Assembly (NCBI GenBank): GCA_002269645.1
Contig: NIVC01000093.1
Span: 969,891-1,033,890, forward strand
Length of the DNA: 64,000 bases
DNA from: Macrostomum lignano
Lineage: Eukaryota
Reading direction: 5' to 3'
In this document: positions 5,601 through 54,218 of the stretch, in pieces
Layout: each line of letters opens with the position of its first letter
Numbering within the stretch: position 1 is the stretch's first letter
Translations under genes and position numbers: made by a program
Notes under the pieces: model-generated
Database searches by the model: none
The model's input: the letters and a program-made list of their open reading frames with translations, nothing else
What the model was told of the DNA's origin: nothing

Positions 5601-37984
<32,384 letters not shown>

Positions 37985-38329: not shown

Positions 38330-38335
38330 CCTGCC

Positions 38336-38370
<35 letters not shown>

Positions 38371-38387
38371 ATGTATGTCTGCCTGTG

Positions 38388-38430
<43 letters not shown>

Positions 38431-38467
38431 ATGTCTGTCTGTCTGTCTGTCTGTCTGTCTGCCTGCC

Positions 38468-38551
<84 letters not shown>

Positions 38552-38552
38552 C

Positions 38553-38634
<82 letters not shown>

Positions 38635-38651
38635 ATGTATGTCTGCCTGTG

Positions 38652-38690
<39 letters not shown>

Positions 38691-38691
38691 A

Positions 38692-38724
<33 letters not shown>

Positions 38725-38727
38725 GCC

Positions 38728-38815
<88 letters not shown>

Positions 38816-38816
38816 C

Positions 38817-38914
<98 letters not shown>

Positions 38915-38960
38915 ATGTATGTCTGCCTGTGTGTCTGTCTGTCTGTCTGTCTGTCTCTCC

Positions 38961-39016
<56 letters not shown>

Positions 39017-39035
39017 GTCTGTCTGTCTGTCTTAG

Positions 39036-39084
<49 letters not shown>

Positions 39085-39088
39085 TAGC

Positions 39089-39120
<32 letters not shown>

Positions 39121-39135
39121 GTGTGTCTGTCTGTG

Positions 39136-39186
<51 letters not shown>

Positions 39187-39203
39187 GTGTCTGTCTGTCT
39201 GCC

Positions 39204-39286
<83 letters not shown>

Positions 39287-39291
39287 GTGTG

Positions 39292-39390
<99 letters not shown>

Positions 39391-39491
39391 GTCTGCCTGC
39401 CTGTGTGTCTGTCTGTCTGTCTGTCTGTCTGTGTGTCTCTATCTGTCTGCCTGTCTGTCTGTGTGTCTATGTCTGTCTGTCTGTTTATCTA

Positions 39492-39552
<61 letters not shown>

Positions 39553-39728
39553 GTCTGCCTGCCTGTCTGTCTGTGTGTCTATGTCTGTCTGTCTGTTTAT
39601 CTATCTGTCTGTCTGTCTGTCTGTCTGTGTGTCTCTGTCTGTCTGTCTGTCTCTGTCTGTCTTAGTGTCTCTGTCTGTCTTAGTGTCTCTGTCTGTCTGT
39701 CTGTCTCTGCTCTGTCTGCCTGCCTGTG

Positions 39729-39775
<47 letters not shown>

Positions 39776-39812
39776 ATGTCTGTCTGTCTGTCTGTCTGTC
39801 TGTCTGCCTGCC

Positions 39813-39873
<61 letters not shown>

Positions 39874-39876
39874 GCC

Positions 39877-39933
<57 letters not shown>

Positions 39934-39940
39934 GCCTGCC

Positions 39941-39997
<57 letters not shown>

Positions 39998-40045
39998 GCC
40001 TGCCTGTCTGTCTGTCTGTCTGTCTGCCTGTCTGTCTGTCTGTTT

Positions 40046-40088
<43 letters not shown>

Positions 40089-40182
40089 GCCTGCCTGTCT
40101 GTCTGTTTTTTGTCTGTCTGTCTGTCTGTCTGTATGTCTGTCTGTCTGTCTGTCTGTCTGTCTGCCTGCCTGCCTGCCTGCC
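38330..40182. repeat. 1.85-kb (TCTG)n compound microsatellite, intergenic
   Basis: Visible run with TGCC/TATG/TGTG variants; source of the 633-aa CLSV pseudo-ORF. Confidence 0.97.
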
Positions 40183-45841: not shown

Positions 45842-48800
45842 ATGTCTGAGAAGCTGCAGAAAATTCTGGGTAAGTTTATACTCAAACTTTTATTAGGATT
45901 TGATCCTATTCACTGCGTGTATTATGGTTTTTTAATGTACAAGTAGAGGGTCTTAATGAGTGTCAGTGAGTCTCGGTGAGTCTCTGTGAGTATCTGTGAG
46001 TCTCTGTGAGTCTCTGTGAGTCTCTGTGAGTCTCAGTGAGTCTCTGTGAGTCTCTGTGAGTCTCTGTGATTCTCAACGATTCTCAGTGAGTCTCAGTTGT
46101 TCTCAGTGGTTCTCTGTGATTCTCGATCAGTGATACTCAGTGATTCCCTGTGAATTTTAACGATCATAAATGGTTCTATATAAGTGATTCTACGAAGTAA
46201 ATTGTTTAAAATGATTTTTATGGAACTAGTGACCGGCTTCTAAACTGAAACTGAAAATGATCTATTTTTAGAAAATATATTAAACCTTTTAGATACTCAT
46301 GAAACTGCATACCTACTAACTGCACTACTCATTGCAAGTAGTACGCTAAAGGAGTACTAGTAGAAAACTTTTTTGAATATTTCAGCCCACTCTAAGGATC
46401 TAATCAGCTCGCTGCAGGTGCTAATTTACGCCGAGAAGAAGGCCGACTCGAATGTGATCGAGGAAGCAAAGGCGATGATCGAGGAAGCAAAGGCGATGAT
46501 CGAGGAAGCAAAGGCGAAGGCTGTCGAGAACTTAAAAAACTATGACGCAACCGATGATTTGACCGACGAGAACGGCGACACGCCGCTGATTCTGGCGATC
46601 AGTTCGGGTCATCTGGACTTGGTCGAAACCTTGACGCAGAAGATCAAAGGCAGTCTGGCTGGGTTAGACGCGGACTCTGCCAGTAAGCAGTGCCGGAGAC
46701 TACTGAGCAGATGCAACAAGCAGAGAGAGAATGCTCTGCTTCGAGCGGCAGGCATGTGCAACGCAAAGTTCTGCCAACAGGAACAAACGACCGAGTGCCT
46801 CCTGGAGAGACGAACTGAGAAAATATTCCTCCACTTGCTTTACTTCCTGCTCGATAACTGTTCCAAGACTCATTGCGAAGACATTTTAAATCACAAGAGC
46901 GAGAACAGACAGAATTTACTTCACCTGATGTGTTCAACCGAGTACTGCGGGAAATGTCAGAAATTCTGCTTAGCCGAAACTGCTCTAAAGAGGCTGAGGG
47001 ATGACAAGATTCGAGTGGATGCCCAGCTTGAGGACTTCAAGTACAATACACCGCTCTTCTTGTTAATCAAATCGATTGCTCAACACTGGACTTCCGAGAC
47101 AGCAGAACCGGACGTTAAAGCTGCCGAGACTATTCTAGATGAACTGCGCTTCTATTGCGAAATGTTTGGTATCAAGTTCCGGTCGCTACTAAAAAACTCA
47201 TACGGCATGGACGTTGCTCACATCTGTGCCAGGCTTGGCTGCATCAGCAGCGCCAGTGACAGCCTTTACAATTACCTTGCGCAGTACGCCCAGAGACAAG
47301 GCTGCATCCTGGAGCTGTACAAATACAAGCGGACCACCTTCGCGTCGCAGACAATACTCGGCGGTCCCATCGACGGTCCGGATGCTCCTCGCAGTTCGCG
47401 CCAGAGACCGTTTCCCTACGGCCTGTGGACGGCTTTGCACTTTGCTTGCAAAGGTGGACACGTAGATAGTGTCGCCTACCTGCTGAAAGAGCGGTTCAGC
47501 CTGCTAGACTGTACCAAGTGAGACTTTTGTTTGATCTACTGATTTTTCAGACGGTACGAATAAAGTGAGAACTGGCCCAGACTTGGCCCAGATTCACAAC
47601 GAGTAAAATAAAATTAATTACGCGTACAGAGCTTCTATTTGACTTTTTAGGCGTCATGCGTCCTTCTCTACCAGTGTATACTCAGCAACATTGAAAGGTC
47701 GCCACCCTTCACCTGGCCAACCATTTTGTTATTAAAAATGCTTTAAAAAACAATGAAAACCGGGCGAGGCTTCAATCTATCCAGTCTTCGCCCTCTGCTC
47801 TTCCCAATCCCTCCTCACCCAGCTCAACTCTGCGTCGCGTGGCGCAAGTTGCGTCACTCAAAAGTCAATACTGAGCTGGAATTTACTGCGCACTCTCAAT
47901 TGGTGGCGACTTTTTAATGTTGTTGAGCATACATGAATGTAGCTTGTACTGTCGCAAACTGCAATTTGTGATGCAACTCCTACTAAAAACGTATACACCT
48001 ACCAATTGTAAATAAATCCATCGTTCCTATTATTCTTTGGCCTCTTGCTCAAAGAGTTTTCTTTATTGCAATCAGAAACGCAGAATTTAAGCAGCCGATG
48101 CTCTTAATAAGCAAATTCTCACTTTATTTACACGGCCTGTAATCGATTTCTTAGCCAATAAAATAATATGCTAACTAAATAATCGGCTATTTTTAGGGAC
48201 GGCAAGACGTGCACTGATCTGGCATTTGAACGACCCCAAAGTCGAGATGCAATCTTGCAAGCCTACAAGCAGATTGGCTCCGCAAACGATGGCTTGGGAC
48301 CTAACGGTATGTCGTGGGTGCTAGAGTATGCCAGGAGTGTGGATAGTGTAAAATGTGCTCTGGACTTCTGCGACGGCGACTGCGAAAATCACCAAGACGC
48401 TCTCACAGAGCGGGAGGCTGACGAAGAGCTCCTGGCGGCGTGGCGCCTGTTCAAGAACAAAGAAAAAACATTTCTAAAGCAATGCGACCAGCTGAAAAAG
48501 ATGACAGTGAAAGCAGTCATGTATATGTGCTTTGAAAACGATAGCGCTACTCAGTACAGAGCTCTGCTGCACTCCTCATTGCTGCGCAAGGAGCTGCGTA
48601 AGCCGAGTGAAAATAGGAAAAGAAATCTGGGAGAGCTATTGTCCGACACTGAAATTGTCAAGTTTTTCCGCAAAATTGCCAAGCAAAAGATTCACAAAGG
48701 CTTTCTAAGACCACGGAAAGACCGTTGGCAGATTTTAAAAGGGGACTTTTCCATTGTATTAGATCCATGCTGCTCTCCGAAAAAAGAATACTGCGACACG

Positions 48801-51029
48801 CCATTGTTCTCCTATCTCGACAATGGTAGAATTTTTCAATGCAAACTAGGCAAGCCCACCAAGTACTTTAAAGAGCTGTCGCTGGTTGCCGTAGCCATCA
48901 GCACAGGTCGGCCCTGCATGGCTAAAGCGCTGCTGATCACCCGTCAGTTTGACATGATCCCAATGTCCCTTGCCGCCATTGTTCGCTGCAATCGTATGAT
49001 AGAACAGGAGAGCCTCATTAACTACTACCCGATACGGGACACCAATGCCGAGTTGAAGGGCATTAAGGCGTTTGCATCGAAGATCGCCCTAAATGCCATC
49101 GATGCCCTGATCCGTGGCTCCACTGACAGCGAAGCGGACTTAGTCTTTACGTACATGCTTGGCAAGATGATTGGCGTCGACAGTACCGGAACTAGTGGAC
49201 GGCTGCCAAGCTCAAGACATCTGATACCTAAAAGTACGACTAAGCAAAATGGGAGTAAAAACGATTCGAGGTGGCGAAAGTTTTCCACACTCGAGCTGAT
49301 CAGGAAGTCCGAAAGGGAGAGTCTGTACGGAGCAGAATGCATCCAGGAACTGGTGCAAAAGATCTGGCGTCAGCGACCGCAATACTCGAGCGCCAAGAAA
49401 GCCGATATTTTCGAAGAAAAGCTTGATTATCTTCGTTCAAATTCTTCACCGGATTCCGCAAGCGAAAGTGACAAAGGGTGTGGCATGAACTTCCTAAGAT
49501 ACGTCACCTGCCCGAAGCGTACCCTGTTGTGCTACGCCACGACCACCCTTCTCTACATATCACTGCTCATAGCTTCTCTTGTAATGCCATCGGTCAACTG
49601 GAGCTCGTTAGACTTTATTCTTGTGGTTTACCTGATCTCGTTCATTCTACAGGAATTTCACGAATGGCGAATCCGATACACAACACCTGGAGAAGGGCAC
49701 AGGTCGTACTTTTTTGATGCCTGGAATATTTACGATCAGCTGAATATCATCTTCTTGCTCGCAGCCTTTTTTGTAAAGTTTTTTAGTGGCCGCGAGAGAG
49801 GCACCATGTATGACGACGATGCGACAATAGTCGGCAATCAGTCCGGCATCTACGGTCACTTCCTCTTCAAGATGCTCATGTCAGTCGCGCTCCTGTTGGC
49901 CAGTGCCAAATTTATGAAAACTCTGCGCTACTCGCGTCCAATAGGCACCAACGTGGTCATTATGCCTCAGATTTTCTATCGCGACTTGCTGCCGTTTGTC
50001 ATCATACTGACCATACTAATCCTCTCTTTTGGCGCAGTCTTCATAGCCACCTTGACAGTCGGTCAGTACAGCTTTGAAGACGCATTCGGTGGCAAAACGA
50101 AGCACAGAAGCTTGGAGACATTGTTTGAAATTTACACGAGGCCGCTGCTGACAGCATTTGGTGAGCTACAGCTGGAGAAGCTGTACGAATGCGAGCCAAA
50201 GGACGGTGAACGAACCATTGACGGCTGCTACTATCCACTCGGCATAACAATCTTTGCTAGATACCTGCTGCCGGTTTTCTTACTCATAGTTAATCTCGTC
50301 ATGTTCAACATGCTGATTGCCAAGTTCAGCAACTCGGTCAGCCGATTCGAGCGCCGCTCGCAGCTGATTTGGCTGGCCATGCGGCACGAACTGCTGCTCG
50401 ACTTCTGCCGCCTCAATCCATTGCCTCCACCGTTCAACATCCTTGGCATCATTTCAAATTTATACTTTTACTTTTCGCGTCATTTTGAAGCAAAACGGAT
50501 AAAGCCACTTGTGTTAGACGTGGATCACCAGTACAATAGCTGCTCTGCCTGCAAGCACTGCAGACAGTACAAGGAGACTCAAAAGGAGGCCAAAGACCAC
50601 GTGAAATGCTTTGATATTAACAGATGCTCGAAGTGCAATCCAGCTAAGGATCCCAAAAGAAGCTGCTCTAAATGCCAGCTGTGCCGCAATGTCCAGGTAT
50701 CGCGAAGCCTGGGCAAGGATCACGAAGATTTTCTAATTAGACAGGCGAATCAGTTTCGACAGAAGCGCCATCTGATCCGCAGCCAGAGAGTCGAGACAAT
50801 CGAAGACGACATCGAGGAGGAGCTGCTCGGCAGCGCCAGCCTCGTCAACTCCGAGATCGCCGGCATCCGGTTTGACAGTTCGGCTCGAAACAGCGCCTCG
50901 GAGAAGATGGACGCCGCCCAGAGGAAGCTGAGCAAAGTGCTTCGCTGGGCCAGACGCAGCATGCGACAGCGGAATGGGGATCCGGGTTCCACAGGCGCGA
51001 ATCATGACGAGTCGCAGCGGGGTGACTAG
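45842..51029 (+). CDS. Ankyrin-repeat-containing TRPM/TRPS-like cation channel, 1,330 aa: join(45842..45869,46386..47517,48197..51029)
   Basis: Phase-consistent GT-AG introns. About 6 ankyrin-like repeats (GDTPLILAISSGHLDLVETL; WTALHFACKGGHVDSVAYLL). MHR4-like LVAVAISTGRPCMAKALL and pre-S1 IQELVQKIW. Six hydrophobic segments, pore RPLLTAFGE with two loop cysteines, S6 LVMFNMLIAKFS, TRP-helix IW...RHELL and LPPPFNIL. Confidence 0.85.
45955..46150. repeat. 10-bp array (GTGAGTCTCT), TRP intron 1
   Basis: Tandem units decaying toward the 3' end. Confidence 0.85.
46455..46517 (+). repeat. In-frame 21-bp triplication encoding (IEEAKAM)x3
   Basis: TGATCGAGGAAGCAAAGGCGA three times, identical at DNA level. 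Confidence 0.95.
47675..47933. mobile_element. 259-bp MITE with ~32-bp TIRs, TRP intron 2
   Basis: TGTATACTCAGCAACATTGAAAGGTCGCCACC versus the reverse complement of the right end, TGTATGCTCAACAACATTAAAAAGTCGCCACC (4 mismatches). Confidence 0.75.
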
Positions 51030-52866: not shown

Positions 52867-54218
52867 GAACCGGATGGGAACCGGATGGGAACCGGATGGG
52901 AACCGGATGGGAACCGGATGGGAACCGGATGGGAACCGGATGGGAACCGGATGGGAACCGGATGGGAACCGGATGGGAACCGGATGGGAACCGGATGGGA
53001 ACCGGATGGGAACCGGATGGGAACCGGATGGGAACCGGATGGGAACCGGATGGGAACCGGATGGGAACCGGATGGGAACCGGATGGGAACCGGATGGGAA
53101 CCGGATGGGAACCGGATGGGAACCGGATGGGAACCGGATGGGAACCGGATGGGAACCGGATGGGAACCGGATGGGAACCGGATGGGAACCGGATGGGAAC
53201 CGGATGGGAACCGGATGGGAACCGGATGGGAACCGGATGGGAACCGGATGGGAACCGGATGGGAACCGGATGGGAACCGGATGGGAACCGGATGGGAACC
53301 GGATGGGAACCGGATGGGAACCGGATGGGAACCGGATGGGAACCGGATGGGAACCGGATGGGAACCGGATGGGAACCGGATGGGAACCGGATGGGAACCG
53401 GATGGGAACCGGATGGGAACCGGATGGGAACCGGATGGGAACCGGATGGGAACCGGATGGGAACCGGATGGGAACCGGATGGGAACCGGATGGGAACCGG
53501 ATGGGAACCGGATGGGAACCGGATGGGAACCGGATGGGAACCGGATGGGAACCGGATGGGAACCGGATGGGAACCGGATGGGAACCGGATGGGAACCGGA
53601 TGGGAACCGGATGGGAACCGGATGGGAACCGGATGGGAACCGGATGGGAACCGGATGGGAACCGGATGGGAACCGGATGGGAACCGGATGGGAACCGGAT
53701 GGGAACCGGATGGGAACCGGATGGGAACCGGATGGGAACCGGATGGGAACCGGATGGGAACCGGATGGGAACCGGATGGGAACCGGATGGGAACCGGATG
53801 GGAACCGGATGGGAACCGGATGGGAACCGGATGGGAACCGGATGGGAACCGGATGGGAACCGGATGGGAACCGGATGGGAACCGGATGGGAACCGGATGG
53901 GAACCGGATGGGAACCGGATGGGAACCGGATGGGAACCGGATGGGAACCGGATGGGAACCGGATGGGAACCGGATGGGAACCGGATGGGAACCGGATGGG
54001 AACCGGATGGGAACCGGATGGGAACCGGATGGGAACCGGATGGGAACCGGATGGGAACCGGATGGGAACCGGATGGGAACCGGATGGGAACCGGATGGGA
54101 ACCGGATGGGAACCGGATGGGAACCGGATGGGAACCGGATGGGAACCGGATGGGAACCGGATGGGAACCGGATGGGAACCGGATGGGAACCGGATGGGAA
54201 CCGGATGGGAACCGGATG
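52867..54218. repeat. Perfect 11-bp array (GGGAACCGGAT), about 122 copies
   Basis: No variant unit seen over 1.35 kb. Confidence 0.98.

What the first reader, a model, noticed from the sequence alone, without database searches (positions are those of the whole stretch)
45842..51029. Hybrid TRP channel: ankyrin array fused to a TRPM-type core
Seen: about 6 ankyrin-like repeats, then MHR4-like, 6TM, a pore loop with paired Cys and a TRP helix with LPPPF. I could not recognise a SLOG/MHR1-2 or NUDT9H domain. The whole channel region is in one 2.8-kb exon. Established: canonical TRPMs lack ankyrin repeats; TRPA/C/V/N have them but lack MHRs; some TRPS (soromelastatin) members carry ankyrins; flatworm TRPM-type channels include anthelmintic targets. 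Inference: a lineage-specific or poorly described TRP subfamily, possibly from domain shuffling.
Basis: partly seen in the sequence, partly recalled or inferred. Interest (0 to 1): 0.7.

Follow-up and report, generated by a model that had tools for sequence, protein, structure and literature searches.

The report
Ankyrin-bearing TRPM-like channel of a flatworm
This is an intact three-exon gene of the free-living flatworm Macrostomum lignano for a cation channel that joins ankyrin repeats to a melastatin-type (TRPM) pore; it is a very divergent member of a flatworm-only channel family already known from parasites, where one member is the target of the worm-killing drug meclonazepam.

Summary
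A three-exon gene (45842-45869, 46386-47517, 48197-51029, + strand) has canonical GT-AG introns. Its spliced CDS translates exactly to the Macrostomum lignano hypothetical protein BOX15_Mlig021177g3 (1330 aa).

The protein has:
- N-terminal ankyrin repeats;
- a helical pre-TM block that links by profile to TRPM MHR3/4;
- a TRPM-type S1-S6 core with an FGE filter, a pore-loop Cys pair (C1052/C1064), and a TRP helix with LPPPF.

It has no SLOG (MHR1/2) and no NUDT9H domain.

The architecture is real but not new in kind. Flatworm "TRPM-like" channels with ankyrin repeats in place of SLOG were described in 2023-2026 as TRPM_MCLZ (Smp_333650), the meclonazepam target.

This gene is not the ortholog, because the conserved drug-pocket residues H831 and R943 are T837 and K958 here. 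It belongs to a large, strongly divergent expansion known so far only from M. lignano, about 25% identical to anything outside its near-identical copy. I found no description of that expansion.

Most likely it forms a Ca2+-permeable, Ca2+-sensitised tetrameric cation channel with a ligand pocket of its own. That function is inferred, not shown.

Verdict: new member of a known kind; moderate interest.

The parts
45842..45869 (+). Exon 1: ATG plus 9 codons (MSEKLQKIL, first base of Ala10)
   Evidence: Read directly; donor GTAAGT at 45870; spliced CDS equals P0001
45870..46385 (+). Intron 1 (516 bp), contains a 10-bp tandem repeat at 45957-46124
46386..47517 (+). Exon 2: N-terminal cytosolic ankyrin/helical-repeat region (aa 10-387)
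   Evidence: Acceptor TTCAG, donor GTGAGA; Pfam ankyrin families
46499..46642 (+). Ankyrin block A (aa 48-95; NGDTPLILAISSGHLDLVETL)
   Evidence: Pfam Ank_2 E=7.5e-11, Ank E=1.6e-4 on the fragment
46643..47419 (+). Degenerate helical repeats (aa 96-354) with ankyrin-like motif remnants. Not statistically ankyrin.
   Evidence: No Pfam hit at E<=10. All-helical but low-confidence AF2 model. P222/L225/L226 are invariant with an ankyrin repeat of relatives.
47420..47517 (+). Ankyrin block B, first part (aa 355-387; GLWTALHFACKGGHVDSVAYLL)
   Evidence: Pfam Ank E=5e-10; Ank_5 hit 358-396 spans the exon junction
47518..48196 (+). Intron 2 (679 bp), phase 2
48197..51029 (+). Exon 3 (2833 bp): last ankyrin repeat, linker, MHR4-like block, S1-S6, TRP helix, C-terminus, TAG stop
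48198..48281 (+). Ankyrin block B, second part (aa 388-415; DGKTCTDLAFERPQSRDAILQAY)
   Evidence: Ank_5/Ank_2 hits
48840..49373 (+). Conserved pre-TM helical block (aa ~602-779), a divergent MHR4-type region. Includes the RQFD..P and CIQELVQKIW motifs.
   Evidence: phmmer and iterated HMM hits to paralogs, overlapping their PF25508 hits; hhalign 95.2%
49512..49925 (+). S1-S4 voltage-sensor-like domain (aa 826-963) with E873, E876, N897, D900 at the TRPM Ca2+-site positions
   Evidence: Alignments to TRPM2; AF2 pLDDT 70-86
49965..50333 (+). S5, pore helix, filter FGE (50157-50165), pore-loop Cys pair C1052 (50190-50192) and C1064 (50226-50228), S6
50334..50435 (+). TRP helix (IWLAMRHELLLDF, D1122-F1123) and TRP box 2 (LPPPF)
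50541..50684 (+). Cys-rich insertion (9 Cys: CxxCxxC ... CxxxxxCxxC ... CxxCxxC), found only in this gene and its near-identical copy
50718..50969 (+). Two long C-terminal helices (aa 1228-1270 and 1287-1311). The first carries the conserved FLxxQAxxFR motif and is rib/pole-helix-like.
   Evidence: AF2 secondary structure at low confidence; F845/Q849/R857 columns >=90% conserved

Best explanation
The locus encodes a functional-looking subunit of a tetrameric, non-selective, divalent-permeable cation channel. It belongs to the flatworm 'TRPM-like' family, whose founding member is TRPM_MCLZ.

In this family the nucleotide-binding SLOG domain (MHR1/2) of TRPM and TRPS channels is replaced by ankyrin repeats. 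The MHR3/4-type helical region, the TRPM-type S1-S6 core, the TRP helix and the C-terminal helices are kept.

This gene is a paralog, not the ortholog, of TRPM_MCLZ. It sits in a strongly divergent clade that has expanded in Macrostomum lignano.

Inferred working:
- The ankyrin and MHR-like domains form the cytosolic ring.
- Intracellular Ca2+ binds the conserved S2/S3/TRP site (E873, E876, N897, D900, D1122) and sensitises gating.
- An unknown ligand or physical cue acts through the S1-S4/TRP-helix pocket. This pocket is lined differently from those of TRPM_MCLZ and TRPM8.
- Cations, including Ca2+, pass a filter with a Glu (FGE), stabilised by a pore-loop disulfide (C1052-C1064).
- It is not gated by ADP-ribose, since it has neither SLOG nor NUDT9H.

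What is shown: gene structure, domain content, homology.

What is inferred: tetramer, permeability, Ca2+ dependence, ligand pocket.
For: **One gene, intact.** The exact spliced CDS has canonical sites, and an ankyrin repeat spans the exon 2/3 junction. A relative (P0007, 1537 aa) has ankyrins, the pre-TM block and the TM core in a single uninterrupted ORF on a 5.1-kb contig.

**TRPM-type core.**
- PDB phmmer ranks TRPM2/4/5/7/3 at 1e-10 to 1e-3, NOMPC at 2.5e-4 and TRPC at ~1e-2.
- A TM-domain HMM built from 61 TRPM-type and ankyrin-type sequences does not detect a TRPA1 even at E<=10.
- The Foldseek top 50 are all TRPM, at E~1e-11.

**Family.**
- The closest relatives are M. lignano paralogs and neodermatan proteins with ankyrins, PF25508 and Ion_trans but no SLOG.
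- The ankyrin/pre-TM type and the SLOG type are mutually exclusive among 200 sequences.
- A bipartition separating the two types appears in 79.5% of 200 NJ bootstraps. The query's subclade has 94.5% support.
- For the pre-TM region, hhalign gives 95.2% to the TRPM_MCLZ-type profile against 18.7% to true TRPMs.

**Identity of the family.** The Schistosoma member P0207 carries H827, H831, Y864, E868, R943, H946, Y1038 and Y1117 at exactly the numbering published for Sm.TRPM_MCLZ (PMC10788528, PMC12861061). The papers describe ankyrin repeats in place of MHR1/2.

**Mechanistic residues.** E873/E876/N897/D900 align with zebrafish TRPM2 E857/Q860/N883/D886. The FGE filter and Cys pair are seen. Sm.TRPM_MCLZ conducts Ca2+ when expressed in HEK293 cells.
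Against: - The TM domain alone does not place the query closer to TRPM_MCLZ-type than to SLOG-type TRPMs (142.5 versus 139.5 bits).
- With a single TRPA1 outgroup, the NJ tree puts the query's long-branched subclade outside both. Family membership therefore rests on the N-terminal architecture, the pre-TM block and an unrooted 80% bipartition.
- Intron positions are not shared with Schistosoma TRPM_MCLZ. Its exon 2/3 junction aligns to aa ~672, which lies inside our exon 3.
- No PF25508 hit in the protein itself.
- Both AF2 models are low-confidence (pLDDT 45.8 and 48.7).
- No expression or functional data were available here.
- The near-identical copy P0002 is modelled with a frame-shifted S1-S2, so some copies may be decaying.
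- The Ca2+-site and filter readings are inferences from alignment.
Confidence: 0.72

Rival explanations
1. The query's clade is a separate, deep-branching TRP subfamily (ankyrins, MHR4-like block, TRPM-like core). It is not a subgroup of the TRPM_MCLZ family. It may descend from an ankyrin-bearing stem of TRPM/TRPS, or it may have replaced SLOG with ankyrins independently.
For: - Only ~25% identity to any non-identical protein among 1.84 billion representatives.
- TM HMM scores are equal for the ankyrin-type and SLOG-type profiles.
- The TRPA1-rooted NJ tree places the clade outside TRPM_MCLZ plus TRPM.
- Intron positions differ from TRPM_MCLZ.
- The residues conserved in all TRPM_MCLZ orthologs are not kept.
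Against: - The pre-TM block is clearly homologous to that of TRPM_MCLZ-type proteins (95.2%) and not detectably to true TRPMs.
- The unrooted bipartition of ankyrin-type versus SLOG-type has 79.5% support.
- Long branches with one distant outgroup make the rooted position suspect.
- The same overall architecture in the same phylum is more simply explained by one origin.
Confidence: 0.15
2. It is an ordinary member of a classical ankyrin-bearing TRP family (TRPN/NOMPC, TRPA, TRPC or TRPV) whose pore merely looks TRPM-like.
For: - Ankyrin repeats followed by a helical linker, 6TM and a TRP helix is the standard TRPC/TRPN layout.
- NOMPC and TRPC do appear as weak PDB hits (2.5e-4 and 1e-2).
Against: - TRPM hits are 6-8 orders of magnitude better.
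- The TM-domain HMM built from TRPM-type and ankyrin-type sequences fails to find TRPA1.
- All of the Foldseek top 50 are TRPM.
- Relatives carry Pfam PF25508, a TRPM-specific domain.
- The published tree places TRPM_MCLZ next to TRPMs.
Confidence: 0.03
3. The gene is a decaying or non-functional copy in a recently expanded, repeat-rich genome. The ankyrin-channel reading frame is intact only by recency.
For: - M. lignano holds many near-identical and divergent copies.
- The sister model P0002 reads an alternative frame through S1-S2.
- The ankyrin region is strongly degenerate.
- No expression data were examined.
Against: - The CDS is 3990 nt, uninterrupted, with canonical splice sites.
- The functionally critical positions are kept despite ~75% divergence from relatives, which implies long purifying selection: Ca2+-site residues, WN..D, the GE filter, the Cys pair, S6 N/A/F, the TRP W and LPPPF.
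Confidence: 0.1

Closest known systems
TRPM_MCLZ (Schistosoma mansoni Smp_333650 and its orthologs in all parasitic flatworms), the meclonazepam-activated 'TRPM-like' channel
   Same: - N-terminal ankyrin repeats in place of SLOG/MHR1-2.
- A homologous pre-TM helical block.
- A TRPM-type S1-S6 core, a TRP helix with LPPPF/LPPPL, and the conserved C-terminal FLxxQ helix.
- No NUDT9H.
- Three exons, with the channel in the last large exon.
- Flatworm-restricted.
   Different: - Only ~24% identity in the core.
- Drug-pocket residues differ: H827, H831, Y864, R943, H946 and Y1117 become Y833, T837, F869, K958, K961 and F1123.
- The filter region differs: FGE here, versus FEV/SIVLEE in the orthologs.
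- The exon 2/3 junction is not at the homologous position.
- There is an extra Cys-rich insertion.
- It belongs to a multi-copy M. lignano clade, whereas the Neodermata have a single ortholog.
Canonical TRPM channels (closest solved: choanoflagellate TRPM2 chanzyme 8srj; also TRPM2, 4, 5, 7, 3, 8)
   Same: - S1-S6 and TRP-helix sequence similarity.
- The Ca2+-site positions in S2/S3/TRP.
- The pore-loop Cys pair.
- A G-E filter, as in the TRPM2 chanzyme and TRPM6/7.
- An MHR3/4-type region, detected by transitive profile match.
   Different: - No SLOG/MHR1-2, no NUDT9H or kinase domain, and no Pfam TRPM_tetra.
- Carries ankyrin repeats, which canonical TRPMs lack.
TRPS (soromelastatin; C. elegans CED-11)
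   Same: Belongs to the same TRPM/TRPS-type superclade, judged by core similarity.
   Different: TRPS has SLOG and NUDT9H and no detectable ankyrin repeats (PMC7306681). This protein is the reverse on all three counts.
TRPN (NOMPC) and TRPC
   Same: The overall layout: ankyrin repeats, helical linker, 6TM, TRP helix.
   Different: Core similarity is far weaker (E=2.5e-4 and ~1e-2, versus 1e-10 for TRPM). The linker of relatives matches the TRPM-specific PF25508.

Membership tests
TRPM (canonical) | N-terminal MHR1/2 (SLOG, Pfam LSDAT_euk) | tested here: not met
   No LSDAT_euk at E<=1. My own SLOG HMM hits 30 other proteins but not this one.
TRPM (canonical) | MHR3/MHR4 helical region (Pfam PF25508) | tested here: inconclusive
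   No direct PF25508 hit. The direct hhalign to TRPMs is 18.7%. The transitive link through relatives is strong (95.2%, then 99.6%).
TRPM (canonical) | TRPM-type S1-S6 core and TRP domain | tested here: met
   PDB phmmer E=1e-10 to TRPM2; Foldseek top 50 all TRPM
TRPM (canonical) | Absence of N-terminal ankyrin repeats | tested here: not met
   Pfam Ank_2 E=2e-12, Ank E=5e-10
TRPS | SLOG plus C-terminal NUDT9H, no ankyrins | tested here: not met
   No SLOG and no NUDIX. Only 197 aa lie after LPPPF. Ankyrins are present.
Flatworm TRPM-like family (TRPM_MCLZ type) | Ankyrin repeats at the N-terminus, no MHR1/2 | tested here: met
   family description in PMC11731825 and PMC12861061
Flatworm TRPM-like family (TRPM_MCLZ type) | Homologous pre-TM (MHR3/4-type) block | tested here: met
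   hhalign 95.2%, E=2.5e-8, 131 columns. The iterated HMM reaches TRPM_MCLZ orthologs and M. lignano PF25508-positive paralogs.
Flatworm TRPM-like family (TRPM_MCLZ type) | TM core groups with the family rather than with SLOG-bearing TRPMs | tested here: inconclusive
   The unrooted NJ bipartition has 79.5% support. HMM scores are 142.5 versus 139.5 bits. The rooted NJ tree places the subclade outside.
Flatworm TRPM-like family (TRPM_MCLZ type) | Three exons, with exon 3 encoding the whole channel domain | tested here: met
   Three exons, and exon 3 holds the channel. However, the exon 2/3 junction is not at the homologous residue.
TRPM_MCLZ orthologs (strict) | Pocket residues H831 (S1) and R943 (S4), invariant in 63 orthologs; Y1117 in the TRP helix | tested here: not met
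   T837, K958 and F1123 at the aligned positions (PMC12861061)
TRPM_MCLZ orthologs (strict) | Activation by meclonazepam | not testable with these tools
   Needs heterologous expression
TRPN / TRPA / TRPC / TRPV | TM core most similar to that family | tested here: not met
   NOMPC 2.5e-4 and TRPC ~1e-2, with no TRPA or TRPV among the 60 PDB hits listed of 85. TRPA1 (P0252) is not found by the TM HMM.

The most novel reading that the evidence does not exclude
The query's clade may be an undescribed TRP subfamily in its own right. This clade has roughly twenty 50%-identity clusters in Macrostomum lignano, plus one environmental contig. On this reading it is an ankyrin-bearing lineage branching at or below the TRPM/TRPM_MCLZ split, whose massive expansion in a free-living flatworm reflects a sensory (chemo- or thermo-receptive) radiation.

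If the ankyrin array were ancestral rather than a replacement, this would overturn the view that ankyrins were lost before the TRPM-TRPS split.
Probability: 0.15. Interest if true: 0.6.

Novelty: new member of a known kind. Interest (0 to 1): 0.35.

Why it matters
TRPM_MCLZ and TRPM_PZQ are the two validated anthelmintic targets among flatworm TRP channels. Published work states that TRPM_MCLZ occurs in all parasitic flatworms, but in the papers I could search it does not treat free-living species.

This locus and its relatives show three things:
- The ankyrin-for-SLOG architecture predates parasitism, since it is present in Macrostomorpha.
- Parasites kept one copy, while a free-living worm has dozens of divergent ones.
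- The S1-S4 ligand pocket is the part that varies.

That gives a natural series of pocket variants in a tractable laboratory animal, usable for asking what these channels sense and how the pocket tunes ligand choice. For TRP evolution, it documents a clean case of an N-terminal sensor domain being exchanged on a conserved TRPM-type core.

Tried and rejected
1. **Word-indexed homolog search.** The search with the protein itself found only itself and a near-identical copy. The search with a 22-sequence TM profile found five proteins. The exhaustive representative search was what opened up the family.
2. **phmmer of the pre-TM region alone against PDB.** Nothing at E<=10.
3. **Pfam on the middle of the ankyrin region.** Nothing at E<=10. 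My crude single-repeat HMM found only two repeats.
4. **AF2.** The exon-2 model (pLDDT 45.8) is unusable, so I ran no fold search on it. The exon-3 model (48.7) is usable only for the TM part. Only the window's own sequence and word-indexed hits could be supplied as the alignment, so the close M. lignano paralogs could not be used.
5. **Shared intron positions with Schistosoma TRPM_MCLZ.** Rejected: the junction aligns about 285 residues downstream of ours.
6. **Rooting with the single TRPA1 in hand.** The result depends on long branches and I do not trust it.
7. **TM-only HMM scoring to assign the subclade.** No discrimination.
8. **Reference sequences from paper supplements.** None held as text for the TRPS paper.
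Contradicted by the source.
10. **A second TRP gene or an alternative exon 3 in the window.** None found by tblastn.

Full report
**What is there.** The window is genomic DNA of the free-living flatworm Macrostomum lignano. The long open frame at 48183-51026 is 100% identical to NCBI protein BOX15_Mlig021177g3, a 1330-aa 'hypothetical protein'.

Reading the junctions directly and splicing 45842-45869 + 46386-47517 + 48197-51029 gives a 3993-nt CDS that translates exactly to that protein. The introns are 516 and 679 bp, with GTAAGT...TTCAG and GTGAGA...TTTTAG ends. Exon 3 is 2833 bp.

**One gene or two.** Three independent points say one.
- The last ankyrin repeats run across the exon 2/3 junction: Pfam Ank_5 matches aa 358-396 of the spliced protein.
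- A relative, P0007 (1537 aa on a 5.1-kb metagenome contig), has ankyrins, the pre-TM block and the channel in one uninterrupted ORF.
- The founding member of the family in Schistosoma was cloned as cDNA with the same layout (PMC10788528).

**Domains: ankyrin repeats.** Ankyrin families score E=2e-12 to 5e-7, but support is concentrated in aa ~48-95 and ~355-415. The 255 residues between give no Pfam match at E<=10. The AF2 model of exon 2 is all-helical but unreliable (pLDDT 45.8). By eye that stretch holds three or four degenerate repeat motifs.

**Domains: channel core.**
- Pfam finds Ion_trans (E=5e-9).
- PDB phmmer ranks TRPM2 chanzyme (1e-10), TRPM2, TRPM4, TRPM5, TRPM7 and TRPM3 ahead of NOMPC (2.5e-4) and TRPC (~1e-2).
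- Foldseek on the partly confident exon-3 model (TM part pLDDT 70-86) returns only TRPMs in the top 50, at E~1e-11 and low TM-scores of 0.28.
- There is no SLOG, NUDIX or TRPM_tetra match.
- The pore shows FGE (aa 1041-1043) and C1052/C1064, in columns conserved in >=90% of an alignment with relatives. The TRP helix is followed by LPPPF.

**The 'MHR4-like' claim.** Taken alone, the pre-TM region hits nothing in the PDB or in Pfam. In the exhaustive search, several hits align in one stretch from exon-3 residue ~225 through the TRP helix.

An iterated HMM seeded on aa 388-830 converges on 84 domains, all in ankyrin-type relatives. It overlaps their Pfam PF25508 ('TRPM2-like domain') matches.

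Profile-profile comparison gives:

| Comparison | Probability | E-value |
|---|---|---|
| Query's clade vs TRPM_MCLZ-type pre-TM | 95.2% | 2.5e-8 |
| TRPM_MCLZ-type vs MHR3/4 of SLOG-bearing TRPMs | 99.6% | 8e-24 |
| Query's clade vs TRPMs directly | 18.7% | 1.3e-3 |

The claim holds by transitive homology only.

**Relatives.** Apart from a near-identical copy (P0002), the best of 1.84 billion representatives is E=1e-36 at 25% identity.

The named relatives are all flatworms. They include many M. lignano paralogs, plus Opisthorchis, Dicrocoelium, Schistocephalus and Cichlidogyrus. A search from the Dicrocoelium protein found one ortholog of ~1380 aa in each of Schistosoma, Trichobilharzia, Fasciola, Calicophoron, Taenia, Echinococcus and others. 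Several of these are auto-named 'TRPM7'.

Pfam shows ankyrins + PF25508 + Ion_trans without SLOG in these proteins. True TRPMs in the same hit list have SLOG + PF25508 + Ion_trans, with or without NUDIX. Across 200 sequences the two N-terminal types never co-occur, apart from one weak single-repeat hit.

**Identity of the family.** The literature search found it. Sm.TRPM_MCLZ (Smp_333650) is the channel activated by the anthelmintic meclonazepam.
- It 'lacks the NH2-terminal MHR1/2 or SLOG domain'.
- It has 'modules reminiscent of ankyrin-repeats'.
- It is 'typically encoded by 3 exons', with 'exon 3 encod[ing] the entire channel domain'.
- It occurs in all parasitic flatworms.

These statements come from PMC10788528, PMC11731825 and PMC12861061.

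The Schistosoma protein P0207 carries H827, H831, Y864, E868, R943, H946, Y1038 and Y1117 at exactly the published positions. The S. mekongi protein P0204 has Tyr at the position (944) where the paper reports Y944 in S. japonicum. The neodermatan clade is therefore TRPM_MCLZ.

**Where the query sits.** An NJ tree of 61 TM domains (301 columns) puts all ankyrin-type sequences on one side of a bipartition. This appears in 79.5% of 200 bootstraps.

Three subclades are supported:

| Subclade | Bootstrap support |
|---|---|
| The query's M. lignano clade | 94.5% |
| TRPM_MCLZ orthologs | 100% |
| A second M. lignano clade | 99.5% |

Caveats:
- The query's TM domain scores equally against ankyrin-type and SLOG-type HMMs (142.5 vs 139.5 bits).
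- Rooting on the one TRPA1 available pulls the long-branched query clade outward.
- The Schistosoma exon 2/3 junction aligns to aa ~672, inside our exon 3. The three-exon likeness is therefore not a shared intron position.

The pocket residues reported as invariant in 63 TRPM_MCLZ orthologs (H831, R943) are T837 and K958 here. The gene is a divergent paralog, not the ortholog.

**How it probably works (inferred).**
- E873, E876, N897 and D900 align with zebrafish TRPM2 E857, Q860, N883 and D886. These residue numbers are from my knowledge of the TRPM2 cryo-EM work, and the count along the printed alignment matches them. D1122 sits at the acidic TRP-helix position.
- All five positions of the TRPM Ca2+ site therefore keep oxygen donors, which suggests Ca2+-sensitised gating.
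- The FGE filter resembles that of the TRPM2 chanzyme. From established knowledge, a Glu at this position underlies divalent permeation in TRPM6/7.
- Sm.TRPM_MCLZ conducts Ca2+.
- Without SLOG and NUDT9H, ADP-ribose gating is not expected.
- The S1-S4/TRP pocket, which binds menthol, praziquantel and meclonazepam in relatives, is lined differently here. This implies a different ligand or cue.

**Novelty and verdict.** The hybrid architecture is real, but it has been published for parasitic flatworms since late 2023.

Two things appear not to be described. One is the presence of the family in a free-living flatworm. The other is its large expansion there, to which this gene belongs. The meclonazepam papers do not mention free-living species. 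The 2026 TRPM survey had no flatworms and states that all TRPM/TRPS have MHR1-4.

I rate it a new member of a known kind, interest 0.35. I give a 15% chance that the query's clade is a subfamily of its own.

Noticed in passing
window 15958-37620 (+): A dynein heavy chain gene lies upstream. Separate ORFs match DHC_N2 (E=1e-35), AAA_6, AAA_7, Dynein_AAA_lid, AAA_lid_11 and Dynein_C, in the order expected along the protein. The exons are separated by GC-rich and tandem-repeat-filled introns.
   Followed up: partly
whole window, e.g. 52867-54218, 29896-30722, 38331-40180, 21394-22746: The window is crowded with minisatellite and microsatellite arrays (41 TRF rows at score >=200). Examples are an 11-bp unit x123 and a 14-bp unit x59, both 100% identical, and a 1.85-kb (CTGT)n. 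Many long 'ORFs' in the list are just these repeats read in frame.
   Followed up: no
window 50541-50684 (aa 1169-1216): A Cys-rich insertion lies between the post-TRP helix and the conserved C-terminal helix. It has 9 Cys in the pattern CxxCxxC-x15-C-x5-CxxC-x9-CxxCxxC. It is present only in this protein and its near-identical copy, not in other paralogs, TRPM_MCLZ orthologs or TRPMs. It is cytosolic, so a zinc-binding module is one possibility; this is untested.
   Followed up: partly
window 49478-49717 (+2 frame relative to the gene) and protein P0002: The database model of the near-identical copy (P0002) contains the stretch KIRHLPEAYPVVLRHDHPSLHITAHSFSCNAIGQLEL. This is the out-of-frame translation of the S1-S2 region in this window. 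The other copy, or its assembly, therefore has a frameshift there.
   Followed up: no
window 50398-50403 (aa 1122-1123): The acidic 'gatekeeper' position of the TRP helix is Asp (D1122). According to PMC9910428, Asp is the variant that permits potent praziquantel action in TRPM_PZQ, whereas all other schistosome TRPMs have Glu. The rest of the pocket differs, so no sensitivity is implied.
   Followed up: no
protein P0007 / P0163 (5106-bp contig, binned as a Kangiellaceae MAG): A 1537-aa ankyrin plus TRPM-like channel of the query's clade is annotated in a gammaproteobacterial metagenome bin. It is almost certainly eukaryotic DNA, probably from a meiofaunal flatworm, that was mis-binned. It does show the whole architecture in one intronless ORF.
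   Followed up: partly
proteins P0003 / P0152 (Opisthorchis viverrini): These models contain two channel domains in tandem (TM hits at 719-992 and 1350-1677). This matches the duplicated alternative exon 3a/3b reported for Opisthorchiida TRPM_MCLZ in PMC12861061. The two alternatives were probably read through as one protein.
   Followed up: partly
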